This document shows, one piece after another, positions 540 to 39,100 of a stretch of 64,000 bases of DNA. The notes beneath the pieces are model-generated. The model worked only from the letters and a program-made list of their open reading frames with translations. It was not told where the DNA came from and searched no databases. The stretch is taken from assembly GCF_001194135.2 (NCBI RefSeq), contig NC_069005.1, positions 454,717-518,716 on the forward strand. Direction: 5' to 3'. Positions within the stretch are counted from its first letter, which is position 1; every line of letters starts with the position of its first letter. The stretch is from Octopus bimaculoides. Its lineage: Eukaryota. Made by a program: the position numbers and the translations under genes.

Positions 540-1737
540 GATGGGGGGGGGAGTCTCAACTTGCATCACCAACATGGTTTTGGTTCTCAGACATCCCCAA
601 GACAAGTGCAGAGAGCAAAACAAAGGACTTCACATAACCTTTGTCGACCAAAGCATTCGACACTGTAAGCAGAAAAGGTCAATGGTAAATCCTAGAAAGT
701 CGTGGAGCCACCCCGCTCCCCAATTCTTCAGCGTGAGCATCCGAATACATGGAAACCTGCAGGACCAGGTCAGGTACAGCAACGATCTTTCTGAGTCCTT
801 CCCTATTAGCAACAGTGGGGGGGGGGCTGTGTCCTAGCGCCGACTCTTTTCATCTTCAGTGTGATGCTCTAACAAGCAACCGAAGACCACGACGATGAAG
901 ATGGCATCTTCATGCCGTACTCATGGCAACCTCTTCANNNNNNNNNNNNNNNNNNNNNNNNNNNNNNNNNNNNNNNNNNNNNNNNNNNNNNNNNNNNNNN
1001 NNNNNNNNNNNNNNNNNNNNNNNNNNNNNNNNNNNNNNNNNNNNNNNNNNNNNNNNNNNNNNNNNNNNNNNNNNNNNNNNNNNNNNNNNNNNNNNNNNNN
1101 NNNNNNNNNNNNNNNNNNNNNNNNNNNNNNNNNNNNNNNNNNNNNNNNNNNNNNNNNNNNNNNNNNNNNNNNNNNNNNNNNNNNNNNNNNNNNNNNNNNN
1201 NNNNNNNNNNNNNNNNNNNNNNNNNNNNNNNNNNNNNNNNNNNNNNNNNNNNNNNNNNNNNNNNNNNNNNNNNNNNNNNNNNNNNNNNNNNNNNNNNNNN
1301 NNNNNNNNNNNNNNNNNNNNNNNNNNNNNNNNNNNNNNNNNNNNNNNNNNNNNNNNNNNNNNNNNNNNNNNNNNNNNNNNNNNNNNNNNNNNNNNNNNNN
1401 NNNNNNNNNNNNNNNNNNNNNNNNNNNNNNNNNNNNNNNNNNNNNNNNNNNNNNNNNNNNNNNNNNNNNNNNNNNNNNNNNNNNNNNNNNNNNNNNNNNN
1501 NNNNNNNNNNNNNNNNNNNNNNNNNNNNNNNNNNNNNNNNNNNNNNNNNNNNNNNNNNNNNNNNNNNNNNNNNNNNNNNNNNNNNNNNNNNNNNNNNNNN
1601 NNNNNNNNNNNNNNNNNNNNNNNNNNNNNNNNNNNNNNNNTCAAAAGCCATCGTTCTAATCACCTTCTAATCTATGGTTCAGAGTCGTGGGTCGTCTATT
1701 GGCACCACCTGTGACTCCTTCAGCGATTCCATCAGGA
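540..1737 (+). mobile_element. RTE-clade LINE reverse-transcriptase remnant spanning an assembly gap
   Basis: Frameshifted TNMVLVLR..QDKCREQNKGLHITFVD..KAFDTVSR and GCVLAPTLF before the gap; KAIVLITL..YGSESWVVY..H..LLQRFHQ after it. Confidence 0.8.
938..1640. other. Assembly gap (N-run); other gaps at 3807-3862, 22140-22635, 28780-29190, 34645-34767, 38019-38093, 39376-39385, 43475-43484, 48633-49012 and 60160-60922
   Basis: Runs of N. Confidence 1.
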
Positions 1738-2412: not shown

Positions 2413-3682
2413 CATTATTTACTGGCTTTGTTTTCAGCTTCATGCCCCACAACATCTTGTGTACTTCAATTTCGAGGTATTTGTACCTAAACAGTGAATA
2501 AGTTTACTTTAAAGTTTACTTTTAAAGTGGTTCTCAATGGATTATGTGCGTGATGGGGGGGGGGATAACAGTAAACAAAAAGTTTGATGCTCCCTGGTTT
2601 ACAAACACACACACACACAGAGCAGTAATTGAAATGATGTGGGACTGTAGGGAAGAGGTTAGGATGTTCCTCTGCGAAAGGGTAGCTTATGTTTTGTCTC
2701 AACTTCCCATCATTAGCTTCTCCGAACTTCACACATAACAATTTGCGAATAAATTTTAGGAACGACAACGAGAGAGAGAGAGAGAGAGTCTTTAACTTTT
2801 AAGGAATAAAGTTACCATAACAACAACAATAAAAGGACCAAGATACAGATGTGTCTCTCATCCTTCTGATTTTGTTTTCTCATAAATTTATGAAAAATGG
2901 CTTCTTTTTTCAATAGAATTTTCAACAAATACATTTAGGATGGAATAGATTACGAAAAATATTGGAATCTGATGTGGAAAAAAATTGTCGTCGGTGAGGT
3001 GGTGGATAATTTCCATACAGACTCAAAACTTCAGAGGAAACAAAGTCGAGAATTTATGAAATATGTGACCCAGAGTTTTTCATATCAAATTCCAACATCT
3101 GAAGCGGGTTTGTTGAAAATTTCATTAAAAAATATCCATTTTTCAGAAAGTTGAAAAGACAACAAAGTTGAGATGCGTGAATTATTGAAACTCGTCTCTC
3201 CTCAATCTTTCTAAAAAGGTTTTACAACAAAATTTCGACATCACTTTAATCTTCTTTCTGTGGGAAACTTTCAGAAAATTATAAAGAAATAAAATCGTTG
3301 GGATGAGGGAGGATAAAAATAATCCGTTAATTTGCAAAGAAAGAAAAAGACAGGAATTTGAAGAAAGAAAACAATGTATGAAAATACCTTCTATGTCATG
3401 AAATATTCCAAAGTTCTATTGTGAAGATAAGTTTGTTCTGTGCAAATCATTCATTGTCTAAGTGTACTTGACACAAAAGGCAAAATACTGTGAGTGAGAG
3501 CGTGAGTGAATGAGTGAGTGAGTGAATATCCGAGTGAGTGAACACACACACACACACACACACATACATATAAAGAAGGATGAAAGAATGCAGTCGACAA
3601 TCGTCGTTGGTATCCAGGGGTTTCGAAACTGGATTAAAACACTTTTTATTTAGCACTTTCGTCTTCATCAATGATTTCTTCA

Positions 3683-3806
3683 AGCTGGCATAAATGTTAG
3701 CACGCCGCCGGACGAAATGCTGAGCGATATTTCGTCTGTCATTACGTTCTGAGTTCAAATTCCGCCGAGGTCGACATTGCCTTTCGGGGTCGATAAATTA
3801 AGTACC
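3683..3806 (+). mobile_element. SINE family A, truncated by a gap
   Basis: Same head and B-box as 1779-1990. Confidence 0.7.
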
Positions 3807-4542
3807 NNNNNNNNNNNNNNNNNNNNNNNNNNNNNNNNNNNNNNNNNNNNNNNNNNNNNNNNAAAAATTTCGGGCCTCGTGCCTAGAGTAGAAAAGAATA
3901 ATGAGAATCTTATAAATGACAATATCCAGAGACAATTTTCGTTTGGTTTCGTCCGGGAAATTTTTTTTTAGTGAGAATTTCTTATGCTGTTTATGAATAT
4001 ACTTGTTAGGCGTTTAGTTTTGGAATAAATAAATTTTATGAAATGTAGTTCCATTGCCTTTCGGTGCATATACATATACAAACATACATACATACATACA
4101 TACATCAATAGTTATTTATGTATACACTAGCGTTGCTAGAGTGTGTGTCGCCCGCGACAGCCCTTCCGTTTGCCGTCCCCTGATCCCACAAAAAACACAT
4201 TGCCTACAGCAAACTCAAAAGTGCTGTCTCATTAAAAGAATATCATGCAATTATTTGGGCAAAGTTTCTTCTTTCACCCACAAACCAGCAAAGAGTTTGA
4301 CTTGTGATAACAGTGAGGGCAGGTAAACTGAAAATGGCAGGTATGCATTTGCAAGCTCAAACGTCCCACAGCTGACTGACGATAAATGCAAATACTCCCG
4401 CTCAGAGCACATTCCCTCTTGCTGAAATTAATTTTTGACAACATCAATGATGCTGAAAAATTGCTGATGCCAGTCATCGATGACAGAGAGATCACCTTCT
4501 TCAGTAGTTGCTGTATGTCTGAAGCGCAGCATTTTGCCATCA

Positions 4543-4702
<160 letters not shown>

Positions 4703-4924
4703 GCTGGGTAACCAAGTATCTCCTTTACAACAGCACACCTATTTCAGTCCTCATTCTCTCACTCTCTCTCCAGTCAGGTAACCTTGTACCTCCTCTACAG
4801 CAAGAAAACCTGTTTCTGTCTCTCTGCCACACTCTAATCTTTCATCGTCTGACACAAGACCACCTCTTCCAATGCCCCCTCCCCTTTCCCAAAGGATCCT
4901 TGTCTTGCAAGTTACTTGGTGACC

Positions 4925-5115
4925 CTGCCAGTGCTGGTGCCATGTAAAAAGCACTCCTTCCACTCTGCTGGGTGTTAGAAGGGCATCCAGCCATAAAAAA
5001 CCCTGCAAAAACAGATACAGAAGTCTGGCGCAGGCTCCCACCTGGCCAGTTCCTGTCAAACCATCCAACCCATGCCAGCATGGAAGACAGACGTTAAACG
5101 ATGATGAGGATGATG
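4925..5115 (-). mobile_element. Dispersed repeat family B (CGTTTAACGTC...CATGCTGGCATGGG...CTGGATGCCCTTC)
   Basis: Reverse-complement match to copies at about 6889-7100 and 21265-21480. Confidence 0.7.
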
Positions 5116-5178
5116 ATGATACATATATATATATATCCCCACATACACCCACCCATAGAGTCCTTGTCAACTGTAGAC

Positions 5179-5374
5179 CAGTGCTTCTCAAACTATCTCA
5201 TGTGGTTTACCAGCAGTTTTTGTTTCCCCCCCCCCCCAATGTGCCAGGGACAGGTAATATTTCTTAGTAATATCAATTTATACAGGAAACAAATAATACA
5301 ATATTACATTTTATGAGCATTTTATGTTTCTTTCTTTTCTGGAAGCTTGCAGACCAGCACTTTGAGTAGCAGTA
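5179..5374. mobile_element. hAT-type MITE
   Basis: TIRs CAGTGCTTCTCAAA / TTTGAGTAGCAGTA; 8-bp TSD ctgtagac / ttgtagac (7/8 match). Confidence 0.7.
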
Positions 5375-6888
5375 TTGTAGACAACAATAACCACTTGGCA
5401 GACAAACCCCATAACCTAAATTGTCTTCAGTTTTCTTTCAGATATACATTACATCCAAAATGTGTTACATAAGTCTGTTATACACCCACATCTATAACAC
5501 GTTATATAACATAACATTCCATACAGTTTAATTCCTTGCATAGAAATCTCTTGAACTTTTTAAACTTCAGACATAAACTGTGATTTTAAATGTCTTTGGT
5601 GGCAGGAGGAGGCAGTTGTTTGACACTTGAAATATTTAATTGCTTAGTGTTACAATAAGTAAATAAAGTTAAGGGTTATTATATATTAAATACAATTAAA
5701 CCTTGGGAGAAGCTGGTAATAAACACACACACTGGTTCAGTCCTTTATTAATTTATATAGTTTTTTGTTAAATTATTTCATTGCACTGAACCAAGGTTTA
5801 ATTGTATTTCTTTCAACACACGTATCCACATCAAGAATCTTGCACACGAAATACACATATGAAATATACTAAATAGTTTGACAGAAAAATATCTCCATTT
5901 TTGTTTTCAAAACAAAAGAATCACTTTTCAACTTGAAACGGTCTCATTTTCAAAGCAATGTTAACAATAAATATTTGGGCAGTTTTGAAAATTGTCCACT
6001 TGAACAAAAAAGAAAATGGCTAAAGTGTGTGTTTTAAAAAATAAAATATTTCACAGTCCATTTTTGGAACAGTGAATCTCAAAGTATTTATACATAAGGC
6101 TATAAGTAATTGGATGTAAATATGGGGTTGAAAATCCCTTTTGGATAGAAAAAGTTGCAGCCTGCTTCTGAATATTTCTATCCAAAAGGGATTTTCAGTC
6201 CAATATTTGCATGCAGTTGTTTACAGCCTTATGTGCTTCAAGATTCACAGTTCCAAAAAAGAATCATTTCACATTCTCTCAAAAGTTTCTCAATTCTTTT
6301 TAAATCAACACAGTACGCTTCCATAAATAATTTGCTCTTTTGAAACTATAACAGTTGTTGGGTTGGGAAAATAAATTGATAGAAAAATATCAACAAACTT
6401 GTCTTTAATGCAAGGCTTCAGCACAGTTGCAAAACTGAAAGTATTCACATCCAAGATTTCTCTTCTCTTTTCTTTTCTGACTTCTTCTGAACAATGACTA
6501 CAATAAATATTCAGACAATTTAACAACTCCTATTGTAAACAAAAGAAAAAAAACCCCAACTAAAATGTGTGACCCAAAATAAAGTATGACTGTGTAAGCA
6601 TTGGTCCTTTTGAGGTCGTACAGATTGAGTTACAAGAGAGACACCTCCTCAACAGAATTCAAACTCTAACAGATGTTATTGTTTAGTTTTATCTCAGATA
6701 AAATTAGCTGAAGTCACTGACTGTGGTCTTATCAAGGAAGCACCAGGGAAATAGCAGCATAATTGCCCTCAAATCATAGTCCACCGTTTTAAATACATAC
6801 ACACACACATATGCACATGCAACAATAAAATCTAGATAAGCAGATGGCTTTGACTGAACAATTCCCATGTCTACATATCAGAAGATCA

Positions 6889-12154: not shown

Positions 12155-12468
12155 TTACAACTTTTGTTTTGCCAATGTTGCAATTTGCACTTTTTCCTTC
12201 AATTTGCCAGGCAACTGGTATTGGACCGCATCGGTAGCAAACTGAACGGAATATTTGTCAGACATGTGGATGAGGAGCAAATGGTTGATGTCGTCGAATA
12301 AGGAAGCATGTTCAATGATCTCTGACAAATGGGTGTGGCCACGTTGTCTTGCTTTGCTGATGATGCCAGGGGTGAAACCTTCCAAATAAGTGGCTTCCAT
12401 TATCAACAACTTGACCTTCAAGAGGTCAGGTGGTGGGTTCATCAGGAACACTTCAAATGTTGTGTCAC
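12155..12468 (-). CDS. TM-type short tRNase Z, coding exon 4 (GDT, MEAT, GHTH, LIHMS) to stop
   Basis: Acceptor ctctgtttcag|GT completes FTGDT. Contains LLIMEATY, RGHTHLSEI and LLLIHMSDKYS. Total spliced CDS is 1182 nt = 393 aa plus stop. Confidence 0.93.
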
Positions 12469-12742
12469 CTGAAACAGAGAATGGTGAGGCAGGAGGAGAA
12501 GAAGGTTAATCAGTCATGTGCGAGAGAGGGGGGGACAAGGGGGAGTGAGCAGTGAGCGATAAAGATGTAAAGAAAAAAAAGCAAAGAAATAAGCAGAGAG
12601 AGAGAGAGAGAGAGAGAGAGAAATGGGCAGGAAGACAGAGTGTGTTCTAGAAGCAATAGAAAGGGCAGAGAGAGAGAGAGAGGCGACGATGCTTGCATTG
12701 GTTGGGATGTGTCTGTTAGTGACATGACACCAATCAAGTGAG

Positions 12743-13035
12743 AGTGTGTGGCTAAGTGGTGAGGGTGCTCAGCTCAAGACTGTAAGGTCATGAGTTCAAT
12801 ACTTGGTGGCACATTGTGCCCTTGAGCAAGACACCCTATGTCACATTGCTCCAGCCAGCTCAGCTGGCAAAAATCCACTGTACCTGTAATTCAAAGGGCC
12901 AGCCTTATCTCTCTCACAACTATGTTAAGGGTGTCTGTGGAGTACTCGGCCATTTGCATGTTAATTTCACAAGCAGGCTGTTCTGTTGATCAGATCAACT
13001 GGAACCCTTATCATTGTAACTGACAGAGTGCCAAT
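12743..13035 (+). mobile_element. tRNA-derived SINE in tRNase Z intron 3
   Basis: A-box TGGCTAAGTGG, B-box GAGTTCAATAC, body GTGCCCTTGAGCAAGACAC; related head at about 56460-56560. Confidence 0.65.
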
Positions 13036-13185
13036 TATGCCAATCAATTAGGTGGCCCTTTTCTGGATGATTGTGTTTGAAGAAGAGAGACCCTTGTAGA
13101 AAGGGTTGATGGTTCCCTTATGATTTTGCTTTCTGTTTGATGGATGAAAGGTTGTGTCAAGACAAAAACACCAGCAATGACTTAC

Positions 13186-13384
13186 CTGTAAAAGCCACCT
13201 CGGGGACATAGTGGACATCATAAAGAGACAGATTCTTATTCTCTGCTTCCAGAGCAGTTAATTGTTTTGAGCTCAGATGTCTGAAATGAGGCTTTGGCGT
13301 CAGAGTCCGATGATAAACCAGGTAACCCTGGCTCAGCACTCGGTGGTACGTGGCAAATGGACGGACTATATATTGAGAAGATAT
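13186..13384 (-). CDS. TM-type short tRNase Z, coding exon 3 (motif III, short flexible arm, start of motif IV)
   Basis: Acceptor ccattgcag|ATA. Encodes VRPFATYHRVLSQGYLVY...PEVAFT. Donor ACAG|gtaagt (phase 1). Confidence 0.92.
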
Positions 13385-13499
13385 CTGCAATGGAAAAGGA
13401 AACTCTAAGATTAAAATCAAGGAGGAGGAGAAGGAGAAGAAGAATTGGCCAGGCCCATGCCTATAAATCTATATAAAAAAAACACCCCAAACCCACGTA

Positions 13500-13760
13500 T
13501 GCCAGCCTCAACATCACTATTTTAAGACCTCCTCAACCAACTCTCATTCTTGCACGAGTTGGTTGGACAAGATTTTTCCAGAAATTCATTAGAACTTGTT
13601 AGGATTTCTTTCATGATGGTCAGCATTCTGAGTTCAATCTGCATCAGTTCTTTCCCTATCTGCCTCTTCTACAAGTTCCTGGTTCCACTTTAATCATTTG
13701 GCATTTCTTCATCCCAGCTGCCATCTCTCATCCGAATAACAGCAATAAAGGCTTATTCCT
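13500..13760 (-). mobile_element. RTE LINE 3'-end remnant
   Basis: IKVEPGTCRRGR..GK-like translation shared with other RTE 3' fragments in the window. Confidence 0.5.
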
Positions 13761-15120
13761 CTCTTGTGCACTGCGACAGACTCTTATGTCTAATTTATTT
13801 TTCTGAATGGGTGAGTGAGTGAGTGCGTGTGAAGTATGATTTCCACTCTTGAAAATCATGACAGATTTGGTAAATGATAATCACTTCATGTTGCCGGTTG
13901 TTATGTCAACAAGAGGTTTTTGTGAGTCACCCAATTTGAGTGAAATTGACCTCATTTACCAGACAACATCCGGTGCCTTTTATAAACATTTCTATAATAA
14001 ACTAATTAGTGTTAGCAAATGATAACAAGGGTTAATGAAGCTGGATAATATGAAATGTTCAGAGTCGTCTCCTTTGCAAAACTTTACTATTTTTCCTAGT
14101 CCCACATGTTTTAATATGGCTGTAACATGTAGATATATTCCAGTCTATCGTTAGATTATTTAAAAATGTAACCAACGACCTTTTATAAATGTCTACAGTT
14201 TTGTATGAAGGTAAAAACATGTTAAGAAGTTTCCTCTGCAGCCACATTGCTCTGAGTTTCTGGATTCAACCCCCACTGCTTGGTTCCCTGGACAAGGGTC
14301 TTCGACAGCTTCACATCAATCAGTTCCTTGTGAGACAGAAACTGTGCAGAAGCCTTTCATTCCCTCTTTGTTTCTCCATGCTAATATCAGTTGGTCAGGG
14401 AGGTAGTAGAAGCTGGATTTTTAGGGCTGGATGCTCTTCCTGTCACCAAACCTAATCTCTTTTCCAAATAAGGGACTTTCTACTCCAGAGGAATTCAAAT
14501 GTGCACAGCTGGAGGATGATTTGTTGAACAGGAAATGTCAACAAACGTCACCAGTTGCAACTCAACCTCAAACTTGTAATTGAGCCACAAACATTTATGT
14601 ATATCATCATCATCATCATCATCATCATCATTTTAATGTCCACTTTTCCATTTGTTGGTTGGAATGGGCTGAGACAGATTTTCTTTGGCCAGATATTGTT
14701 CCTGTCACCAGCTCTCACTTGTTTCCATGTAAGGTAATATCTCCCCCATGGTCAGACATGTTCTCACAAAAGAAAAAAAAAAATTTTAAAGCTGTGCTCC
14801 AGAATGACCAAAGTCCAATGAAAGAAACCAGTCAGAAAATATGATAATATTTTCTACCTGTTCTAAAGAATTTACAGTCAAAAGTGCCATGCGGTAGGAT
14901 TGAACTCCTAATGTTTACATTAGGAGTTCAAATTTGACTGACATCAACTTTGTTTTTCTTCTTTCTGGGGTTGAAATCAAGAAGAATTGCTTTTTTTCAT
15001 GAATTCTTAGAGAATCTCTTCACGGAAGATGAGATGATACACTGTACTGAAGTGGATTAACTAATCCATTAAAGACAAGGAGATGACACAGAATACAATA
15101 AAGGATCAAGCAAGCTTTCA

Positions 15121-15343
15121 TTAAACCTTAAGCATTGAAACTAGCCTAATCTGGCTCAAATATTCTACTTGTTTTATCTTAAAACTGGCTAGATCCTACC
15201 TCTCACACCTAGCCTACAATGTCATTTTAAAAATAAACAATCACATCAGTGAAATCTTGAAGCTACAAGATAATGCCTGATTCATTGAAAACGTGAATAA
15301 ATAATCATTAAATTTGAAATCTGAATGCTAAATAAAGGATTAA
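15121..15343 (-). mobile_element. Half copy of the piggyBac-like MITE
   Basis: Shares CTACAATGTCATT..AAAATAAACAATCAC..CTGAATGCTAAA with 47560-47753. Confidence 0.6.
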
Positions 15344-16151
15344 TTATTGATATGAGTCCACATGGCTTTGGTGAAGGGTTCAATGCTTTACTTCAGCCAA
15401 TGTTGGTGGAATCTTTCATAAAGCTTCATTAAAATAAACTTCCTGAAATATGTGGCTGCTGTTATTATAAACTCACCAAAAGCAACCATCATAGAACAAA
15501 CACAGTCAAAGGGAAATAAATCCGAATAAATCAAAACCGTTTTTTTTTTCCCAGCTGATATTTTTTGTTTCTTAAGATTTATCTCTTTTTGTTGGTGGCT
15601 GATATAAGGATTAGTTTCATTCTGGTTAGGATTTTGAAAGGAAAGGATATAATGCAAGATGGCACAAGTGTGGCTGTGGGGGTTAAGAAGTTTTTGTTTT
15701 TGTAACCATGTCGTCTTGGGTTCATGTCGTCTTGGGTTCATTCTCACTACATGGCTCCTTGGGCAAGTGTCCTTTACCACAGCTCTCACAAGGCTAACCA
15801 AAGGAAGGAGAATCCACTTTTAAATTTTAGAAGAACCAGGATCCAAATATCAAAAATTGTTGTTGTTACTGCATCTATGCACATCTCTCATCTCCACAGT
15901 CTTTCACAGAGGATTCAGAATTTTGATGGGAATTTTGCCAAAAGAAATTTGATGAATTCTATAGCCTAAATAGCTAACCAAATGAAACCTATTAATCACT
16001 CAGTGGCTAAAAGCATCTGATAAAATCGCTGATCTCTTTTAGGACATCGAACTGACCATCCCATTTTTATTTCGTTATTTTTTTAATTTTATTCTTTCTT
16101 CCCTAACCAAGCCTCCAACAATCGTTCATGTATGCTTTGTTTAAAAATTCA

Positions 16152-16187
<36 letters not shown>

Positions 16188-16332
16188 TCAAAATGACAAA
16201 GAACATCTGTCAGACCCATGCCAGCATAGGAAAGTGGACATGAAAAGGATGAAAATGAGGATGAATGTGTTTGACCAGGGCCAACCTAGGGCCAAAAAGA
16301 AAGAAAAGCAGTGACCCCCACCAGTGTCTTAC

Positions 16333-16540
16333 CTGTACACTATTGCCTTGCTCAATTGGTTGAATGTCCAGCTGTTTCAGAACAGGTGGTGTGTTGGACA
16401 AAGAATACATCTGTTCTCCAATCTCTTTCAAGGGTACAACAAGGTGTGGAGGGACGTAGTAGGTGGCCGGTGTCCAGTTGTACAAATTCCTTTTAGTTGC
16501 ATGCTGGAACAGTCCTGACACATGGTCTAAATGTCCATGG
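16333..16540 (-). CDS. TM-type short tRNase Z, coding exon 2 (His motif SHGHLDH)
   Basis: Acceptor taatag|C; AG+C=Ser gives ISHGHLDHVSGLFQHATKRNLYNWTPATYYVP, like plant TRZ1 THAHLDHIGGL...RGLY..PP.IFVP. Donor CAG|gtaaga. Confidence 0.93.
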
Positions 16541-17556
16541 CTATTAGAATGATTGGCAGCAACCGAAAACGAAAAAATAGAACAAAAAAAAAAAAGGAGA
16601 AAATAATTAATCACTAATCAAAACCTGAGTAAGTGCATGCATGTGTGTGTTTGGGGGGATATATCCTTTCCCAAGTGCAGAGAAGGGGAGTGTGGTACAG
16701 TTTAGTCTGGTCCCTGTAGATGTGTGTTCTAGAGATGATAATTGATCAAAGCCCCCATGAAAGTGAGGTGTCCTCACCTCAAGGGGGAATGTGAAGATGT
16801 TGCCTAAATGGAGAAGAGCTATAAGTAGAGAAACCATCACCCAGCCTCCCATTTATAGACTTCCCAATCAGCAGCCGACCCTCTTTTCTTCCTCTCCATT
16901 CCTTGATTCTGCTCCAACCACTTTCAGAAGCACTGGAAAGGAATCGAACTGACAAGCTACTTGCTTTGAATTACAAGGACTCAGGATTTTTTGTTCAAGT
17001 TGGGCTTCCATAGTGTTAAACTGATAAAAGATACATTTCTCCAGGATAAGAAGCTAGTTTTTCAGTAAGAACTGAACTCAGCAATAAAGTCCCAATAAAC
17101 GAATCCCTAATTTCCAAGTCTCTTATATTCTCTTTGGTTTCTAACTGAAGCTATGTGGACTTGACCCTTGACAATAAACTGTTCGTCCCACATTGTCATG
17201 CCGTTGTCATCTCACTTACAATTTCACTCCCTCCCATCCTTGCCAGTACTTCACTGTGTGTGAGTGTGTGTGTGTGTCTCACACACACAAAAGGCAATGG
17301 CTTTCAAAACAGTACAAATAGGCTGACAGGGATGGACACTGAAGAACAAGGTCTATTGTTAAATATTTAAATACAAGATAAAAAAAAGTGATTAATGGTT
17401 GGGGGAGGAGGTGTGGGGGGGTCCTTCAGCAGGTCAGGAAAATACTTCTCTTCTTCAACAAAGTAATCTGTCCATAATACTAAATACCAATACAGTAATG
17501 TACTATGCAAACACCTATTCCTTTTAGTTTGGGGTTTTTACCATCCACATCCTTGT

Positions 17557-17597
<41 letters not shown>

Positions 17598-17614
17598 TGA
17601 TGATCTTTCTTTAG

Positions 17615-18130
17615 CTAACCAGTCACTGCATACAAATATCATTAAGGCTAAAATAGACAAATCCGCAAAGAGTGCAAAGTGCAGAGTTTGTAACAAGAAA
17701 GGGGAATCCATTGTGCACAAAATGAGGTCATGAAGTCGTTTGGTGCAGAGGGAATATAGACACAGACCTTACTGTGTAGGCAAGGCCCTACAAAGGGACA
17801 TATAGACACAGACCTGAGTGTGTGGCCAAGGCCCCACAATGGGAACATAGACACAGACCTTACTGTGTAGGCAAGGCACGACAATGGGACATATAACAGC
17901 AAAGAGGATTTGAAATGGGAAGAAAATGGTAAGAACATGAACCAGAAAGTGTAATAGAGAATGACCAGAATAAGGTTTTATGGGATTTTAATGCACAGAC
18001 TGACTGCAAAATGCATGCCAGGTGACCAGATATTATGGTTCTGCACAAGTGGGGGGGGGAGTGCCTCATCATAGATATGGCTACATCTGTGGACATGAAT
18101 GTAGCAGTGAAAGAAGAGGAAAGAATGATT
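17615..18130 (+). mobile_element. R4/Dong-like non-LTR retrotransposon remnant (zinc knuckle plus REL endonuclease)
   Basis: KCRVCNKKGESIVH and NKVLWDFNAQTDCKMHAR*PDIMVLHK..CLIIDMA..D.NVAVKEEE. Confidence 0.75.
17751..17886. repeat. About 45-bp tandem repeat x3 inside the R4-like remnant
   Basis: Unit GGA(A/C)ATATAGACACAGACCTTACTGTGTAGGCAAGGCCCTACAA(A/T)G. Confidence 0.85.
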
Positions 18131-18494
18131 TGGCAAAGGAAATACAATGACTATGGATGACTTTTTCTACAAAAAGTCATCTCCTCTCTGAATCACAACC
18201 AAATCTGTATCACCAATATTCTATTGAACTCTTCTCTGTTCGAGGACAGGCATCAAGTATTCTCCATTATAGCGCCAAGAGCAGCAGAAAACAATGTCCA
18301 TTCTAACTTTATGCCTGAATAACATGAAACATTGTTTATTCTTAAGAAACATAAATAGAGAGTCATACAAGCAATGGTGTGTGGAACAATTCTTGCAGAG
18401 CAGAGAGGAGTTTTACAATTTTAGTAATTATTTTTGGATTAAAAAAAAAACTAACAATAATAAGCATGTTGTTTTGTCTTATATTACAAGTCTT

Positions 18495-18707
18495 CTTTCC
18501 TACTCTAGGCACTAGGCCCGAAATTTTTGGGGAGGGGGCCAGTCGATTAGATCACCCCCAGTACACAATTGGTACATAATTTATTGACCCCAAAAGGATG
18601 AAAGGCAAAGTCAACCTCGGTGGAATTTGAAAGTATAGACAGACGAAAGATTTCTAAGCATTTCGCCCAGTCTGCTAATGTTTCTACCAGCTCGCTGCCG
18701 CCTTCTA
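18495..18707 (-). mobile_element. SINE family A
   Basis: Reverse complement of the family A consensus. Confidence 0.7.
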
Positions 18708-19348
18708 CCCCAAGTCTTGTCACATCTGGGATGTCATACGAGAATATTAAATTGACCCCAGTACATGACTGGTATTCCATTGACTGACCTTTGAAGACGA
18801 AAAGCAAAGTTGGCTTCAATAAGATTTGCATTTGGAATGTGAAGAACTGCAATTCAATGCTCCTGCCATTTTGACCACATCCTGACAATGTTAGATTTTT
18901 ATTTTAGGATGATTGAAAATTAGAACCAGTAAGAATATCAAGAACCAATTCAGTCGACTCTATCCCTCACCTATATGTGTCACCTTAATAACATATAATT
19001 ATTATTATTTATGCGTTTCCATGCCTGTACATATTACAGTTATTTGTTTCTTCGCAAAGCAGTCTTATCTTAACGTTCCATTCTCTTTTACATGTCTACG
19101 AAGGGAGCGTCTCAGTATTTGTGTGACCTGTTTAATGTAAAGGAGAATCAATGACATTACACTCCCCACTTTCTTTGAAGTAGACACCATTACATTTTAG
19201 TGTAACACATTGAAGACAGGCACGGCGAGATAACACTAACCACTTTGTTCGTTCTGCTGTCGCCTGCGTCATGTGTTCAGCAACAACAACACGATAAACA
19301 TTATACACACTGGTTGTGAATGTTATATCAATATTCATAACGATGACG

Positions 19349-19530
19349 ACGACGGTGGTGGTGGTGGTGGTGGCAATGATGGTATTAAACGACGTGGTGG
19401 TGGTGGCAATGATGGTATTAAACGACGTGGTGGTGGTGGCAATGATGGTATTAGACGACGTGGTGGTGGTGGCAATGATGGTATTAGACGACGTGGTGGT
19501 GGTGGTGGCAATGATGGTATTAGACGACGT
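19349..19530. repeat. 33-bp minisatellite, about 5 copies
   Basis: Unit GGTATTA(A/G)ACGACGTGGTGGTGGTGGCAATGAT. Confidence 0.9.
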
Positions 19531-19576
19531 TTACATTGACAGCGATGAAAACTATTGCAAACTTGAAAACACCCAC

Positions 19577-20037
19577 CTTATGAAAACATGTTTACAGCGA
19601 ACACTCGCTCGGGTGGCGTAACCGATGTCAAAGGCAACCGACAAACTTTTGTCTTCGACCGTCTGCACCACGACACTTGTCTCCAGGCCCGAGAGGGACC
19701 AAGCATGCACCTGGTATTTACCGCAGGGCATCCAGTCTTTTCGAAGCTTCGATATTGCAGAGCTTTTGACCTTCGCAATATTGTTGTTCCGCTTGTCTGA
19801 GGTAGAGTTGTGATAACAGCTGCCACAAATCTTCATAACACCATGAATATCAGGTGTCTTTTTGCAATCAACAACCGGACGAGTGGCATTTTGGCAAGGT
19901 GTTAACAGGGAAAGACGTCCAACAGAGGAGAAAGTTCGAGTCCAACGGTTTACACCGGCAGAATGAAAAAACAGCTGAAAATCACAGAGACATCGTAGAG
20001 TGAGGGTCACGGTAGGGGTGACACATCGTAAAGACAT
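19577..20037 (-). CDS. TM-type short tRNase Z (metallo-beta-lactamase fold), coding exon 1 of 4
   Basis: ATG at 20037 (acaATG). Encodes an Arg/Ser/Thr-rich N-terminus, then HAWSLSGLETSVVV..AFDIG..VFI. Ends AG|gtgggt (phase 2) and splices in frame to the HxHxDH exon. Confidence 0.88.
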
Positions 20038-21830: not shown

Positions 21831-22104
21831 GTGAGTAAAAATAAATACAAAAAAAGGGTTTTGTATGATCGTGTATAGAGGAATATATTATTTTATTTAA
21901 AAGAGTTCCAACTCTGTCTGTTTTTTATGTTTTTTATTTATATTCTTGTAAAATTTATGTGCGATATAGAATATGGAATATATAATATATAATATAAAAA
22001 AAGATGGATGGTGCAATGAAATGAAGTATTGAATGTCTTATTGAATATATGGAATATGTCTTATTGAATATATGAAATATTGAGTGTTCAATATAAAGGA
22101 TAAA

Positions 22105-22139
<35 letters not shown>

Positions 22140-22813
22140 NNNNNNNNNNNNNNNNNNNNNNNNNNNNNNNNNNNNNNNNNNNNNNNNNNNNNNNNNNNNN
22201 NNNNNNNNNNNNNNNNNNNNNNNNNNNNNNNNNNNNNNNNNNNNNNNNNNNNNNNNNNNNNNNNNNNNNNNNNNNNNNNNNNNNNNNNNNNNNNNNNNNN
22301 NNNNNNNNNNNNNNNNNNNNNNNNNNNNNNNNNNNNNNNNNNNNNNNNNNNNNNNNNNNNNNNNNNNNNNNNNNNNNNNNNNNNNNNNNNNNNNNNNNNN
22401 NNNNNNNNNNNNNNNNNNNNNNNNNNNNNNNNNNNNNNNNNNNNNNNNNNNNNNNNNNNNNNNNNNNNNNNNNNNNNNNNNNNNNNNNNNNNNNNNNNNN
22501 NNNNNNNNNNNNNNNNNNNNNNNNNNNNNNNNNNNNNNNNNNNNNNNNNNNNNNNNNNNNNNNNNNNNNNNNNNNNNNNNNNNNNNNNNNNNNNNNNNNN
22601 NNNNNNNNNNNNNNNNNNNNNNNNNNNNNNNNNNNCACATGACTCAACTTTGTCTAGTCTGTCTTGCTGACAAACACCTCCCATTGCCCACTGGTACCTC
22701 GCAGGTAAGTAATAGGACACAGGTGAGTAAGTAGGATAAAAAAAAAATATAAAATAACAAAAGGCATCAGTAAAGACAAATGTTTCAGCAGTTTGAGGAT
22801 GTTACTGCATGCC

Positions 22814-23516: not shown

Positions 23517-24617
23517 TCAGTGAATTACGAGGATGTTAGGCATCCCAAACAGTTGGTAATTTAGTGATTTGGCAATCTGAGCAAAGCCTTCGCTTTCTAG
23601 GTGATGGTTGACAAGATATGGTGGGAAGATAACTCCACGACGATGCACATTAGCATCAACCAACAGACAAGAGGACCCCACACCATCCAGACTGACCACT
23701 TTGCCCTCATGTTTTAGTTCAGGTAAATACTGTCGTAGAGACTTGTTCGTATAACCTTCCAGCATCAAATATCCGGGCTCTTTTGAATTTAAATATTCTT
23801 TTGATTCTTTGGTTTCTCGCCAGGAATTTCGGTCATAAATATCGAGAATGTTTGGTGCCTTTCGGTACATGCATGAAGGCACCACAATCGGGACGTGAGC
23901 GGAGAGTAAAGTTTGGATAAGATCTTGGGGCACTTCCCGAAGATCGCTGTCAAGCCAGAGGACGTATTTTTCATCGCGCAAAGCACTCATCAGAAGGAAG
24001 TTTCGAACTTGTGCCAACCTCCTGCGACGATTCAACTGAATTGTCTCGTTATGTTTGTCTGAATGGCTCGCCAACATAAGCGTTGCATCATCTGGAATGT
24101 CTAAATTGTAAACTTCAATAGAACGAAATTTGTGTGAAATCCTCGATATCTGCCGTTTAGCAAGTTTAGGGGAGGGGACTCCGTATTTATCAATGCCGAG
24201 TGCAATCCTCAGACGGCAATGGGGATAAGACAAGGAGTTCAGAAGATTGAAATATTGATGGAAAAAACTGGCGAAATTATCAAATGGAGTCAGTATGAGG
24301 ATTGATGGGAGGACAAAGAGGCACTCATTCTTGGTTTCAGAATCTGTCGTTGTGTATTGCATTCTGTCTGTGTTGGGTTGTGAAGTTACCTGTTGTGTAA
24401 CTGTCCGACAGGTTTGGTTGAGAAGACGGAACGTATGGTGGCGATAGGCTTTGGCTTCTCTCATGTGTAAGTGGTACAGACATATGTCTAACTTTAGTCG
24501 GGCATCAGTCCGAAAAATGTCAGCAGTTATGAGATAGGTAAGACTGGATGTAAGTACCACGATACAAAGCATCAGAAGATGCCAGGGTTTTTGGTAAAAT
24601 ATTTTCGGTAGATTCAT
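23517..24617 (-). CDS. Mnn9/Van1/Anp1-like (GT62) glycosyltransferase, type II membrane protein, intronless CDS
   Basis: 366-aa ORF with an N-terminal hydrophobic anchor (LLMLCIVVLTSSLTYLITA). Motifs ILILTP, RRRRLAQVRNFLL, YVLWLDSD (DXD), YDRNSW, LDGVGSSCLLV..VHRRGVIFP and ESEGFAQIAKSLNYQLFGMPN are collinear with yeast Mnn9 as recalled. Confidence 0.9.
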   Translation of the reverse strand: MNLPKIFYQKPWHLLMLCIVVLTSSLTYLITADIFRTDARLKLDICLYHLHMREAKAYRHHTFRLLNQTCRTVTQQVTSQPNTDRMQYTTTDSETKNECLFVLPSILILTPFDNFASFFHQYFNLLNSLSYPHCRLRIALGIDKYGVPSPKLAKRQISRISHKFRSIEVYNLDIPDDATLMLASHSDKHNETIQLNRRRRLAQVRNFLLMSALRDEKYVLWLDSDLREVPQDLIQTLLSAHVPIVVPSCMYRKAPNILDIYDRNSWRETKESKEYLNSKEPGYLMLEGYTNKSLRQYLPELKHEGKVVSLDGVGSSCLLVDANVHRRGVIFPPYLVNHHLESEGFAQIAKSLNYQLFGMPNILVIH

Positions 24618-28640: not shown

Positions 28641-29312
28641 ATTCGTTTGATTCGAACCTTTGATTCGAACCTTTCCCCACTTAATTTTTTTTTTATGAGA
28701 TTTGGCTGTTATTTCTAGCATGTAAATAGCCTGCTTGGAGCTGTGTGGAAATTGAAATTTTACAAACAATATTTTTTCANNNNNNNNNNNNNNNNNNNNN
28801 NNNNNNNNNNNNNNNNNNNNNNNNNNNNNNNNNNNNNNNNNNNNNNNNNNNNNNNNNNNNNNNNNNNNNNNNNNNNNNNNNNNNNNNNNNNNNNNNNNNN
28901 NNNNNNNNNNNNNNNNNNNNNNNNNNNNNNNNNNNNNNNNNNNNNNNNNNNNNNNNNNNNNNNNNNNNNNNNNNNNNNNNNNNNNNNNNNNNNNNNNNNN
29001 NNNNNNNNNNNNNNNNNNNNNNNNNNNNNNNNNNNNNNNNNNNNNNNNNNNNNNNNNNNNNNNNNNNNNNNNNNNNNNNNNNNNNNNNNNNNNNNNNNNN
29101 NNNNNNNNNNNNNNNNNNNNNNNNNNNNNNNNNNNNNNNNNNNNNNNNNNNNNNNNNNNNNNNNNNNNNNNNNNNNNNNNNNNNNNNNNNAGAAATGAAA
29201 TTAAATTGCGGTCAAAGGGAGATAACCGAAGCCAACAAATGGAAGGGAAACAACTCAAAATAATTGATTTCTGATTCAGACGCAACAAATGGAATTTCGA
29301 CAACTTAAAAAT

Positions 29313-34435: not shown

Positions 34436-34815
34436 ACTCTCCCGTCCTAAATTCATTGTTAAAAGCATTAAATAAACTCGGTGCTGTATTATTATTACAC
34501 ATAGTATTTCTATTTAAAAGGTGCATCAAGTTAATATCCGTGTTTTGGACGCGGTCCCTTAATTATTTATTGTCTCTGCTCTCGTCTTTGCTGCATGTTG
34601 TGTTTCTGTTGTTGTCAAGGATTTTCAACATACCCACCTCCTTTNNNNNNNNNNNNNNNNNNNNNNNNNNNNNNNNNNNNNNNNNNNNNNNNNNNNNNNN
34701 NNNNNNNNNNNNNNNNNNNNNNNNNNNNNNNNNNNNNNNNNNNNNNNNNNNNNNNNNNNNNNNNNNNTTTTTTTTTTTTTTAACAGGAAACTCACTAAAA
34801 ATAATGTGGCGTGTA

Positions 34816-36165: not shown

Positions 36166-39100
36166 GATGCTAATGTACGATCTGAGGCGAATTTTGCTAT
36201 TGTTTCTGACGAACCAGCGAGCGGCCGTGTAAGAGACTTTCTCCATAGTTGTCATCCATAATATTTCTTGTCTGTTTATAGTGCAGAGGGGGGTGGGCAA
36301 TGATTGCTTCTATTTGTGCCAAACGGAAATCAAAACCAATAACGATACAACAAAATAGGTGAGGCTAATGTCTCGAGCGAAGTAATATATATTCTTGGAT
36401 AGATAGATAGATAGATAGATATAATTAATGGTGTTTCACTGCTTTCGGATCAAAAGGTTTTCATTTTAATATTTGCCTTTACAACTTCCAATTAATTCTC
36501 GATAAAAAAAAAAAATTCTTAAAACACCGATCCGTTTAAATCTGGTTAATTGACTTTTACCTTTCGTCTCTTGGGATTGATAAAAAAAATATCTGTAATG
36601 TTCTGGGATCGATTCAAAATTTATATTTATATATATATATATAAATCGTACGGTATTTTGTTTATTATTTGCTATTAATTCTGACTACCCTGCCTTTTTA
36701 TTTATTTATTTGCTAACATATTTCATGCAGTGTGCGGTTCAACTTGTTGCTTATGTCAGCAACGACCTTCTTAGGCTGACGACATATTACTGTTGTTGTT
36801 GTTGTTATTATTATTATTATTATCATTATTTTTATTATAAATATTATTATCATTATCAGATACGTGTGTGTGCACGCGCGTATGTGTATCTGTACACACA
36901 CACTCACACACGAAAGCTAATGCCGCAGAACGATTTCGTTGTCGGTTGTGGAGAGGTCTTTCTATGAAGCAGTGCCAACACTACGATGTTTATCCTCGTG
37001 TGCCCACATCTGTAGTGTGTGTGTGTAAGGTAGACTCTCTCGTATGAGTTGAGAAAGCTTCAACTAATTAAGATTATCTAAGCAGTTAGTGGACAAAATC
37101 TCCCTCTAGGCGTGTTAAAAACCTGAAAGACAAGGGATTCAATTCCACTAAAATCAAATAATCAAATTTTTTTTTTAAATAAAAGTGTCGAATCGTGTCT
37201 GGTTTTTGAATCCAACTGGTGAAAGTAATGTACATGTTCCTGTCTCATTAAACCTCTTCAACTAAGCATCTACTCAGTTGGCAAGACTTAGAACGATTTA
37301 GTTGGTTTGTTTGTTTTAACGTCCGTTTTTCCATGTTTACATGGGTTAGATGAATATGTTATTGAAGTATTGTTTTACAATGCTAGATGCCTTTCCTATC
37401 TCTAACCATTACTTGTGAAGAATATTTTATTCCCTGTGGCTTCAGAGGCATGAATCCAGAAAATAATCTGTTGATGAGAGCTGACAACAATATCACCTAC
37501 AAATTGCAACTTAGCTAGATGCAAGCAAGCTATATTGTCATCGTCAATGTTTTGGTGTTCATTTTTCCATGCTGGCATGGGCCAGGTGGAGTTTGCTGAG
37601 GCATATTTTCTGTAGCTGGATGCCCTCCCTGTAGCCAACCTACACTTGTTTCCCAGTAAGCTAATATTTCCTCATGGCAGGACACATTTTCATAGAAGAT
37701 TGGAAACAAAGAACACCACTTGTATGAAGGTGACACTCGTTTACAACTGTCATGTGATGTCAAGGAAAAAGTGACACACACACACACTCACCCCACCATA
37801 TGCACACACACATGCACACGCACACCTACATTTTCCGGTTAGCATTATTCTTGGTATGGTTCCAGTAGTGGTGCACTGGTTCAGGGGTTCCAGTGTTTTG
37901 ATTAAAGAAAAGAATGTTTGTTAGTTCAATGGATTCGTTTATCTCAGACGTTGTGGGTTAAAATGACTTTTGTGTAAGATAGATTTACTTTCTATAAGGG
38001 TAGATTTTAACATGAACTNNNNNNNNNNNNNNNNNNNNNNNNNNNNNNNNNNNNNNNNNNNNNNNNNNNNNNNNNNNNNNNNNNNNNNNNNNNTGGGGTG
38101 GGGGTGAATAAGACCTGAGATTTATCAATGTCTTGTGATCAATTATATTTATCTATTGATTTAAATTTTATCTGAAGGTTTTTTGAAGTAAAAAACTGAA
38201 TTGACAATCATAGCATTTGAACTTTAGAACTTTCTAATATCATCTACACAAACAATACCACATCAGTGAGAAAGCCTATATCCAGTCACTCAGCTTGCTA
38301 GAAATAGCAGCAAAATCTCTCTTTTGTCTTGAAAAAGGAAAACAAGGGTGTTTTATATGTAGTCCTAGATGCATTATGTCTCAGAACCATAGATGTGATG
38401 GTCAAGGTTGTAATGACTTTGATCAGATATGTATGGTCATATGTGACCTAGGGTTAAACACTAATAACAGTCATTAGAGACTTAGTTTTGATCTCTGAAA
38501 GAAGCCGAGAACTTTGTTGCTTAGTTATATGGCTCTTGTTGTTAGCCGTGGGTCTGTTGATGTTTCGCCAATCGGTCAGTCGAATGATTTCACAGCCATA
38601 GTGAAAGTGACCCGTCGAGGAAGCCGAGCAATCCCAACAAACCCAACAGTTTGTCAAATCTGTTTTACTTGGAGGAGACGTAAATTCTGTGAGGTACCAG
38701 CAATTGAGGCAGCCCACTTAGAGGAGCAAGGAAGTGATTCAGCGTTGAGGACAGGCACTTAAGCCTTGACTGATGACAACCTCTCAAATGCTTGTGATGG
38801 GATAAAATGCATACAATCCATGCTGTGCAAAAGTGGCTAAATTTATGAAACCAAAATAAACAGCTTATATAGTAAAATTAATCAGTTTTATTCTGTTACT
38901 GGAATGAAGGGCAGTAATTAGGGGTCAGGAGGCATTGTGAGGCCTGTTTGACCTTTCAGTGTAAGAAGAAATGGACATAAAACACTGCTACGTGTGGTGG
39001 TGGTGGTGGCACTAAGGAGTCTTCTTGGTCCAATAAGTTAGCCTCTGCATGGTTGCTCACCCTGCTAGAAATAACAAACTCCCCTTAAATCACATCAAGA

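What the first reader, a model, noticed from the sequence alone, without database searches (positions are those of the whole stretch)
12155..20037. A plant/Thermotoga-style (TM-type) short tRNase Z in an animal genome
Seen: an intact 4-exon, 393-aa gene with HxHxDH, a short flexible arm, MEAT (xExT), GHTH (HxH) and LIHMS, and WSLSGLET where TM-type enzymes have EGxSxxG.ET. It has no PxKxRN/PxPxRG loop and no GP-type arm. Established: the characterised animal tRNase Zs are ELAC2 (long) and ELAC1 (bacterial-type short); TM-type short forms are characterised from Thermotoga and green plants (TRZ1/TRZ2). Inference: this animal has a third kind of tRNA 3'-processing or repair nuclease, gained by ancient transfer or kept by patchy retention. 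Spliceosomal introns and host SINEs argue against bacterial contamination.
Basis: partly seen in the sequence, partly recalled or inferred. Interest (0 to 1): 0.72.

Follow-up and report, generated by a model that had tools for sequence, protein, structure and literature searches.

The report
Plant-type short tRNase Z in octopus
Octopus has an intact, conserved gene for the plant/Thermotoga-type short tRNA-end nuclease alongside the usual animal ELAC1, and molluscs, worms, brachiopods and acorn worms share it with the same introns, so it is an old bilaterian gene that vertebrates and insects lost, not a recent import.

Summary
Window 20037-12155 (minus strand) holds a 4-exon, GT-AG, 393-aa gene identical to Octopus bimaculoides LOC106869555.

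Sequence, motifs and predicted fold all place it in the TM-type (TRZ1/TRZ2/TMS5-like) short tRNase Z family, not the ELAC1/bacterial type. The best solved relative is rice RNase ZS1/TMS5, then the T. maritima enzyme. Octopus also has a separate ELAC1.

The gene is not peculiar to octopus. Orthologues occur in four mollusc classes, annelids, nemerteans, a brachiopod, flatworms, three hemichordates and a tardigrade. Seven of these species, protostome and deuterostome, share three introns at identical positions and phases. Plant genes share none of them. So the gene was already intron-bearing in the bilaterian ancestor and was later lost in many lineages. Recent transfer and contamination are excluded. 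Its origin before that ancestor is unresolved.

All catalytic residues are invariant, and the core evolves under purifying selection (dN/dS 0.15). The 102-aa N-terminal extension is disordered and weakly constrained, and may be a targeting peptide.

The function is inferred, not shown: a di-zinc tRNA 3'-end endonuclease and/or 2',3'-cyclic-phosphate tRNA repair enzyme.

Databases auto-name some orthologues "TRZ1/TRZ2". No paper I could search describes them, and the 2012 metazoan tRNase Z survey lists none of them.

The parts
12155..20037 (-). Whole coding gene (ATG to stop), 4 exons, 393 aa; O. bimaculoides LOC106869555
19577..20037 (-). Exon 1 (461 nt): N-terminal extension aa 1-102, second Met M103, WSLSGLET, motif I AFDIG; ends in phase 2 inside codon S154
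19732..20037 (-). N-terminal extension (aa 1-102): disordered in the model (pLDDT about 30) and weakly constrained (dN/dS 0.72). Possible targeting peptide, or upstream of the true start M103 (19729-19731).
16541..19576 (-). Intron 1 (GT-AG, phase 2), at the same position in all 7 animal orthologues mapped. Contains a 33-bp minisatellite (19361-19530) and a 45-bp repeat (17749-17895).
16333..16540 (-). Exon 2 (208 nt): motif II HGHLDH (16522-16539), aa 154-223
13385..16332 (-). Intron 2 (GT-AG, phase 0), position shared across animals; contains a dispersed repeat copy at 15138-15292
13186..13384 (-). Exon 3 (199 nt): motif III (H237; 13337-13351) and the short TM-type flexible arm with a degenerate KL motif (13199-13309)
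12469..13185 (-). Intron 3 (GT-AG, phase 1, inside G290 of FTGDT), position shared across animals
12155..12468 (-). Exon 4 (314 nt with stop): motif IV D291, MEAT (12389-12400), GHTH (12329-12340), motif V LIHMS (12260-12274)

Best explanation
This is the octopus orthologue of a bilaterian gene in the TM-type (TRZ1/TRZ2/TMS5-like) short tRNase Z family.

Shown:
- The gene is intact, spliced and embedded in host chromosome sequence.
- Its catalytic core (aa about 103-393) is under purifying selection.
- The core keeps every metal-binding and proton-transfer residue of the family.
- The predicted fold is closest to rice RNase ZS1.
- The gene was inherited vertically from an intron-bearing gene in the protostome-deuterostome ancestor, then lost in many lineages. 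No vertebrate, arthropod, nematode, echinoderm or cnidarian hit was found.

Inferred mechanism, by homology:
- The protein is a homodimeric di-zinc metallo-beta-lactamase phosphodiesterase.
- H155/H157/D159/H160, H237, D291 and H357 hold the two metals. E314 and H334 relay the proton.
- The short arm (about 250-285) clamps the tRNA elbow.
- The enzyme hydrolyses at the tRNA 3' end. It either removes the 3' trailer after the discriminator or, like rice TMS5, opens and removes the 2',3'-cyclic phosphate of CCA-less tRNAs left by Vms1/ANKZF1, so that the CCA-adding enzyme can rebuild them.

It works beside ELAC1, which is also present in octopus. The cephalopod N-terminal extension may send part of the protein to mitochondria.
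For: Gene model and identity.

Family placement:
- PDB sequence search gives rice RNase ZS1 7XGT at E 6.7e-39 and T. maritima tRNase Z at 5.4e-10, with no ELAC1, B. subtilis or E. coli hit.
- The AlphaFold core has pLDDT above 90.
- Foldseek order is 7XGT (E 9e-26, TM 0.87), then 2E7Y T. maritima (1e-15), 1Y44 B. subtilis (4e-12) and 3ZWF ELAC1 (3e-10).
- The protein is 34% identical to Coffea TRZ1 (E 1e-43), against 23% (E 2e-5) to octopus ELAC1.
- The TM-type defining motifs of PMC3161902 were checked.

Catalytic residues: invariant in 20 animal sequences.

Selection: O. bimaculoides against O. sinensis gives core dN/dS of 0.148 at dS 0.23.

Vertical descent: three introns at identical alignment columns and phases (2, 0, 1) occur in Octopus, Liolophura, Haliotis, Owenia, Spirometra, Saccoglossus and Ptychodera, and also in O. 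sinensis. The seven plant introns are all elsewhere.

Distribution.

Separate ELAC1 in octopus and in 10 other species that carry the TM-type gene.

Expression in a relative: a 60%-identical cephalopod-like orthologue is encoded without introns on polyadenylated transcript contigs.

Function of the closest characterised relatives: TMS5 and ELAC1 both remove the 2',3'-cyclic phosphate from cP-deltaCCA-tRNAs (PMC11831146, PMC11897441).
Against: - There are no expression data for octopus itself and no biochemical data for any animal member.
- Curated models score it far below their equivalog cut-offs: TIGR02651 52 bits against 293, and TIGR02650 Thermotoga-type 31 bits against 507.
- Two TM-type signatures are only partly kept in octopus. 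EGxSxxG is HAWSLSG. The KL motif has 3 of 9 consensus residues identical and 3 conservatively replaced.
- The N-terminal 102 aa are weakly constrained and could be a mis-called start.
- NJ trees are poorly resolved. Animal monophyly gets 12-58% bootstrap, and rooting with ELAC1 falls inside the animals.
- Tardigrade introns differ.
- ELAC2 in octopus was not checked.
Confidence: 0.75

Rival explanations
1. The gene entered the animal lineage by horizontal transfer from a bacterium or another eukaryote shortly before the protostome-deuterostome split. It was not inherited from the eukaryotic ancestor. Everything after that, including introns and losses, is as in the best explanation.
For: No named hit comes from cnidarians, sponges, fungi or choanoflagellates in the profile searches. 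Animals and plants share no intron. Close bacterial homologues exist in Bdellovibrio, Spirochaetota, Acidobacteriota and Myxococcota.
Against: The family is also present in green plants and in stramenopiles (oomycete Lagenidium, Nannochloropsis, Mallomonas, Cladosiphon). In NJ trees the animals sit next to stramenopiles rather than inside any bacterial group, though with weak support. Many representative hits are unnamed, so absence from early-branching animals is not proven.
Confidence: 0.35
2. Recent horizontal transfer into octopus, or contamination of the assembly by plant, algal or bacterial DNA.
For: The nearest characterised relatives are plant enzymes. NCBI auto-named the O. sinensis orthologue 'TRZ2, chloroplastic'.
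Against: Three spliceosomal introns of 0.7-3 kb carry host dispersed repeats. The gene lies on a 35.5-Mb chromosome record. O. sinensis has an orthologue with the same introns. Intron positions are shared with other phyla and not with plants. Identity to plants is only 31-38%.
Confidence: 0.02
3. The enzyme does not act on tRNA ends. It is a general RNA endonuclease, or a small-molecule or cyclic-nucleotide phosphodiesterase of the same fold. The first would resemble the reported UbL40 mRNA cleavage by rice RNase ZS1 or the NdhD/NdhF transcript decay by RNase ZS2. The second would resemble Apyc1 or E. coli ZipD acting on model substrates.
For: Plant family members have reported non-tRNA RNA targets (reference list of PMC11897441; abstract of PMC13477058). 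The precomputed Pfam list includes weak Anti-Pycsar_Apyc1 hits. Apyc1 structures appear in the fold search at E 6e-11.
Against: Apyc1 is far weaker than the tRNase Z structures by sequence (E 0.58) and by fold (rank 10). The tRNA-clamping arm is retained and its KL motif is clear in most animal orthologues. All characterised TM-type enzymes process tRNA in vitro (PMC3161902).
Confidence: 0.12
4. The locus is a decaying or non-functional relic in octopus.
For: No expression data for octopus were available here. The N-terminal third evolves almost neutrally (dN/dS 0.72).
Against: The 393-codon frame is intact in two species. Core dN/dS is 0.148. All catalytic residues are kept. Splice sites are canonical. 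A related cephalopod-like orthologue is transcribed and polyadenylated.
Confidence: 0.03

Closest known systems
Rice RNase ZS1 / TMS5 (PDB 7XGT) and Arabidopsis TRZ1/TRZ2 (green-plant TM-type tRNase ZS)
   Same: This is the best sequence and fold match: E 6.7e-39; Foldseek E 9e-26, TM 0.87, rmsd 2.7 A, 31% identity. It shares motifs I-V, xExT and HxH in place of HEAT and HST, the lack of a PxKxRN loop and of a GP motif, and a short arm with a KL-type motif. The size of the core is also the same (about 290 aa).
   Different: Identity is only 31-38%. The plant EGxSxxG is replaced by (A/P)WS(I/L)SG in animals. The KL motif is degenerate in octopus. No intron is shared, with 3 in animals against 7 in plants. 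Octopus has a 102-aa unrelated N-terminal extension. It coexists with ELAC1, which flowering plants lack (PMC3161902).
Thermotoga maritima tRNase Z (PDB 1WW1/2E7Y), the name-giver of the TM type
   Same: Second-best solved relative (E 5.4e-10 by sequence, 1e-15 by fold). It has the same kind of short arm without a GP motif.
   Different: Identity is about 20%. The NCBIfam Thermotoga-type equivalog model scores 31 bits against a cut-off of 507. Bacterial homologues from Bdellovibrio and other phyla are much closer than Thermotoga.
ELAC1 (animal bacterial-type short tRNase Z)
   Same: Same superfamily and catalytic motifs I-V. It is reported to carry out the same cP-deltaCCA-tRNA repair step as TMS5 (PMC11897441).
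   Different: It is a separate gene in octopus (P0120), only 23% identical over a gappy alignment (E 2e-5). ELAC1 has the PxPxRG loop, a GP-motif arm, HEAT, HST and the C-terminal AxDx (PMC3433465). None of these is present here.

Membership tests
TM-type tRNase ZS (as defined in PMC3161902) | MBL motifs I-V including HxHxDH | tested here: met
   D137, H155/H157/D159/H160, H237, D291 and H357 are present and invariant in 20 animal orthologues.
TM-type tRNase ZS (as defined in PMC3161902) | [quoted passage not shown] | tested here: met
   No regex match in the protein.
TM-type tRNase ZS (as defined in PMC3161902) | Gly-rich EGxSxxG in the place of PxKxRN | tested here: inconclusive
   Octopus has HAWSLSG-LET. 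Only S, the last G and the following ET match. The animal consensus is AWSISGxET. The paper notes that variants occur.
TM-type tRNase ZS (as defined in PMC3161902) | xExT in place of HEAT and HxH in place of HST | tested here: met
   MEAT 313-316 and HTH 334-336 are present, with no HEAT or HST. E314, T316, H334 and H336 are invariant.
TM-type tRNase ZS (as defined in PMC3161902) | TM-type flexible arm: no GP motif, KL motif KLKxxYxxLxGxxIxxLK | tested here: inconclusive
   There is no GP dipeptide anywhere, and the arm is short with one helix. The KL motif is clear in most animal orthologues (KLKPEY.GL....I). In octopus it is degenerate: TPKPHFRHLSSKQLTALE, 3 identical and 3 conservative of 9 positions.
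TM-type tRNase ZS (as defined in PMC3161902 and PMC3433465) | No C-terminal AxDx motif | tested here: met
   The C-terminus is ...KVQIATLAKQKL, with no Asp at the equivalent place. ATDA 367-370 is in a helix and is not conserved.
TM-type tRNase ZS | Closer in sequence and fold to TM-type than to bacterial-type or ELAC1 enzymes | tested here: met
TM-type tRNase ZS | Endonucleolytic cleavage of pre-tRNA 3' trailers, or removal of the tRNA 2',3'-cyclic phosphate | not testable with these tools
   Needs an enzyme assay.
ELAC1 / bacterial-type tRNase ZS | PxKxRN or PxPxRG loop, GP-motif arm, HEAT, HST, AxDx | tested here: not met
   All are absent. The genuine octopus ELAC1 is a different protein (P0120).
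NCBIfam TIGR02650 RNase_Z_T_toga (Thermotoga equivalog) | Whole-protein score at or above the curated cut-off | tested here: not met
   31.1 bits against a cut-off of 507. It is a family relative, not an equivalog.
Apyc1 anti-Pycsar cyclic-nucleotide phosphodiesterase | Significant similarity to Apyc1 over the tRNase Z enzymes | tested here: not met
   7U2R gives E 0.58 by sequence and is rank 10 by fold, behind all tRNase Z structures.

The most novel reading that the evidence does not exclude
Spiralians and hemichordates run two parallel short tRNase Z enzymes with divided labour. The TM-type one carries an acid-poor N-terminal extension and a second Met just before the core in many species. 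On this reading it is dual-targeted and is the mitochondrial or stress-specific tRNA 3'-end repair enzyme. Vertebrates and insects would have lost this layer of tRNA quality control and handed its job to ELAC1/ELAC2 and other enzymes.
Probability: 0.2. Interest if true: 0.6.

Novelty: new member of a known kind. Interest (0 to 1): 0.45.

Why it matters
Textbook and survey accounts give animals two tRNase Z types, ELAC2 and ELAC1. The dedicated metazoan survey of 81 species lists no TM-type enzyme and states that Capitella has no short form (PMC3433465). Capitella and at least seven animal phyla in fact carry one.

The plant member TMS5 is the gene behind most two-line hybrid rice. It was recently shown to repair cP-deltaCCA-tRNAs in ribosome-associated quality control, which is the job ELAC1 does in mammals. 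Animals that keep both enzymes therefore offer a natural test of whether the two short forms are redundant or specialised.

The shared introns also give a clean example of an ancient bilaterian gene surviving only in 'non-model' phyla.

The finding is a distribution and evolution result, not a new mechanism.

Tried and rejected
- **Rooting with ELAC1:** rooting the NJ tree with ELAC1 put the root inside the animals. I treat this as a long-branch artefact and rely on intron positions for common descent.
- **Naming unnamed representatives:** 30 unnamed representative hits were looked up by cluster. About half had no name, so the eukaryotic breadth is known only from the named ones.
- **Repeats as SINEs:** Rfam and ARAGORN scans of the window found nothing, so the intronic repeats cannot be called tRNA-derived SINEs.
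- **All-frame ORFs and repeat family D1:** the apparent all-frame ORFs at 895-1714, 21955-22734 and 59957-60986, and the repeat finder family D1, are runs of N.
- **Tardigrade introns:** the two tardigrade introns do not coincide with the shared animal introns, so that gene adds no support from intron positions.
- **N-terminal extensions:** the extensions of different cephalopod lineages show no detectable similarity.
- **Literature:** searches for animal TM-type enzymes, TRZ1-like names, or HGT reports of ribonuclease Z in invertebrates found nothing relevant.
Full report
**1. The observation.**

On the minus strand of the window I rebuilt the gene from the raw sequence.
- The exons are 20037-19577, 16540-16333, 13384-13186 and 12468-12155. 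Every intron is GT...AG. The 1182-nt CDS gives 393 aa.
- An in-frame TAA lies 15 nt upstream of the ATG, and no assembly gap interrupts the locus.
- The product is 100% identical to NCBI 'uncharacterized protein LOC106869555 [Octopus bimaculoides]'. It lies on chromosome record CM046625.1 (35.5 Mb) of GCA_001194135.2.
- PxKxRN, PxPxRG, GP, HEAT and HST are absent.
- Dispersed repeats with other copies in the window lie in intron 2 and just beyond the stop codon.

**2. What family it is.**

- Pfam sees only the generic Lactamase_B_2 domain. NCBIfam ranks RNase Z models first, but far below their equivalog cut-offs.
- Against solved structures by sequence, the best hit is rice RNase ZS1 (7XGT, E 6.7e-39), then T. 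maritima tRNase Z (1WW1, E 5.4e-10). ELAC1, B. subtilis RNase Z and E. coli ZipD do not reach E = 1.
- An AlphaFold2 model built on 20 animal orthologues is confident for residues 100-393 (pLDDT above 90). Residues 1-95 are left unstructured.
- Foldseek against the PDB gives the same order: 7XGT (E 9e-26, TM 0.87, rmsd 2.7 A), T. maritima 2E7Y (1e-15), B. subtilis 1Y44 (4e-12), and human ELAC1 3ZWF only at 3e-10.
- Pairwise, the protein is 34% identical to Coffea TRZ1 (E 1e-43) but 23% identical to octopus' own ELAC1 (E 2e-5).

The paper that defined the TM type lists its features (PMC3161902). Most are met:
- no PxKxRN;
- xExT and HxH instead of HEAT and HST;
- an arm without GP;
- no AxDx, as noted in PMC3433465.

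Two features are only partly met in octopus. The Gly-rich EGxSxxG reads HAWSLSG. The KL motif is degenerate, although it is clear in most other animal orthologues. I therefore file the protein as a TM-type family member. It is not an equivalog of the Thermotoga enzyme itself.

**3. It is not an octopus oddity.**

A single-sequence search found orthologues at 40-60% identity in gastropods, bivalves, a chiton, three hemichordates and a cestode. Green-plant TRZ1/TRZ2 came next at about 35%, then 270-281-aa bacterial proteins.

A profile of 20 animal sequences added more species:
- more molluscs;
- the annelid Owenia;
- the nemertean Lineus;
- cestodes, trematodes and Macrostomum.

An exhaustive HMMER scan of 1.84 billion representatives gave 583 clusters at E <= 1e-30. 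Its top unnamed representatives resolved to Tubulanus, Lingula ('tRNase Z TRZ1'), Capitella and the tardigrade Paramacrobiotus. The first non-animal was the oomycete Lagenidium.

Further relatives are stramenopile algae (Nannochloropsis, Mallomonas, Cladosiphon). Bacterial relatives come from Bdellovibrio, Spirochaetota, Acidobacteriota, Myxococcota, Fibrobacter and Planctomycetes.

No vertebrate, arthropod, nematode, echinoderm, cnidarian or sponge name appeared.

**4. ELAC1 is separate.**

I rebuilt the Lottia ELAC1-type sequence from the 2012 survey's supplementary alignment and used it as a query. It retrieved 'zinc phosphodiesterase ELAC protein 1 isoform X2 [Octopus bimaculoides]' (P0120, 373 aa, on a 168-Mb record).

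The same search found ELAC1 in Patella, Haliotis, Liolophura, Pinctada, Mizuhopecten, Lymnaea, Owenia, Lineus, Saccoglossus and Ptychodera. All of these also carry the TM-type gene. The two short forms therefore coexist widely.

The survey reports a long form in the metazoans it examined (PMC3433465).

**5. Descent.**

I fetched the genomic loci of eight orthologues and mapped their exons exactly.
- Octopus, the chiton Liolophura, Haliotis, the annelid Owenia, the cestode Spirometra, and the hemichordates Saccoglossus and Ptychodera share three introns.
- These fall at identical alignment columns and phases: phase 2 in the Ser codon before HGHxDH, phase 0 after octopus Q223, and phase 1 in the Gly of FTGDT.
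- O. sinensis has the same three.
- Marchantia and Nymphaea share seven introns with each other, and none with the animals.

Identical positions and phases across protostomes and deuterostomes show that one intron-bearing gene existed in their common ancestor. The present patchy distribution is due to loss.

The tardigrade gene lies between ordinary animal genes, but its two introns are elsewhere.

Neighbour-joining trees with bootstrap give the following:
- Hemichordates (100%), cephalopods (99-100%) and green plants (81-82%) are recovered as clades.
- Animals never join plants (0%).
- Animals are contiguous in the unrooted tree, next to stramenopiles.
- Deep nodes are unsupported, and an ELAC1 root falls inside the animals.

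So 'plant-style' describes where the family was characterised, not where the animal gene came from. Whether the bilaterian ancestor inherited it vertically or by an older transfer stays open.

**6. Is it functional?**

- All metal ligands and the Glu/His proton-relay pair are invariant in 20 animal sequences.
- Between the two Octopus species the core (aa 103-393) has dN/dS of 0.148 at dS 0.23.
- A 60%-identical orthologue, which groups with Octopus at 99-100% bootstrap, is encoded without introns on two Logan contigs. One contig ends in a poly(A) run. In-frame stops lie upstream of a start codon that opens a 190-aa N-terminal extension. This is a spliced, polyadenylated mRNA.

Octopus expression itself was not testable here.

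**7. The N-terminal extension.**

Residues 1-102 are disordered in the model. They evolve at dN/dS of 0.72, with one in-frame 3-codon indel between the two Octopus species. They have no detectable similarity to the extensions of the other cephalopod-like sequences.

Hemichordate and chiton proteins start at the core. Many spiralian orthologues have an acid-poor, basic and hydroxylated N-terminus followed by a second Met right before the core (octopus M103). This is the layout that the 2012 survey proposed for dual nuclear and mitochondrial ELAC2 (PMC3433465 abstract). A targeting function is plausible but untested.

**8. Mechanism and comparison.**

By homology the protein should be a dimeric di-zinc phosphodiesterase that clamps tRNA with its short arm and cuts at the 3' end.

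The closest characterised relative, rice TMS5/RNase ZS1, removes the 2',3'-cyclic phosphate from cP-deltaCCA-tRNAs produced by Vms1 in ribosome-associated quality control. ELAC1 does the same in mammals (PMC11831146, PMC11897441). Plant and Thermotoga enzymes also remove 3' trailers (PMC3161902).

I commit to a tRNA 3'-end processing or repair role at about 0.75. Non-tRNA substrates are the main functional rival.

**9. Novelty.**

NCBI pipelines already label some orthologues by similarity: 'tRNase Z TRZ2, chloroplastic' in O. sinensis, 'TRZ1' in Lingula, 'TRZ1-like' in Mizuhopecten, and 'Ribonuclease Z chloroplastic' in Fasciolopsis.

In the searchable literature only the 2011 plant survey and the 2012 metazoan survey use the TM-type concept, and neither reports an animal member. 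The latter states that Capitella has no short form.

The finding is a new animal branch of a known enzyme family, with a clear evolutionary story. It is not a new kind of system.

Noticed in passing
window 23517-24617 (-): An intronless 366-aa ORF lies 3.5 kb upstream of the tRNase Z gene on the same strand. It is called as a gene in the assembly. It matches Pfam Anp1 (PF03452, E 1.4e-51) and yeast Mnn9 (3ZF8, E 4.9e-32), so it resembles a fungal-type GT62 mannosyltransferase. Its distribution in animals was not checked.
   Followed up: partly
window 51077-52117 (+): A 346-aa ORF has a weak RGS-domain hit (E 1e-4, just under the Pfam cut-off). It is possibly an exon of a neighbouring gene.
   Followed up: no
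orthologues P0006, P0011, P0201, P0202, P0197, P0015 and window 19729-19731 (M103): Many spiralian TM-type orthologues have an acid-poor basic N-terminal extension and a second Met just before the catalytic core. This is the two-AUG layout proposed for dual-targeted ELAC2.
   Followed up: partly
P0286 (Capitella teleta CAPTEDRAFT_108450): The 2012 metazoan survey states that Capitella has no short tRNase Z. This partial protein is a TM-type member.
   Followed up: partly
window 19361-19530 and 17749-17895 (intron 1): Intron 1 holds a 33-bp minisatellite (5 copies, 95% matches) starting 47 nt inside the intron from the exon-1 donor, and a 45-bp tandem repeat (3.2 copies).
   Followed up: no
window 938-1640, 3807-3862, 22140-22635, 28780-29190, 34645-34767, 38019-38093, 39376-39385, 43475-43484, 48633-49012, 60160-60922: These are runs of N (assembly gaps). 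They produce spurious all-frame ORFs and a spurious 292-copy repeat family.
   Followed up: yes
P0033, P0368, P0370 and similar representatives: Stramenopile (Nannochloropsis, Mallomonas) and unnamed eukaryote-like homologues carry long low-complexity C-terminal tails after the tRNase Z core.
   Followed up: no
L010 (Paramacrobiotus metropolitanus, 3001-5397): A tardigrade carries a TM-type gene between BTB/BACK and GLTP genes. Its two introns are at positions different from the shared bilaterian ones. It was the only ecdysozoan hit seen.
   Followed up: partly
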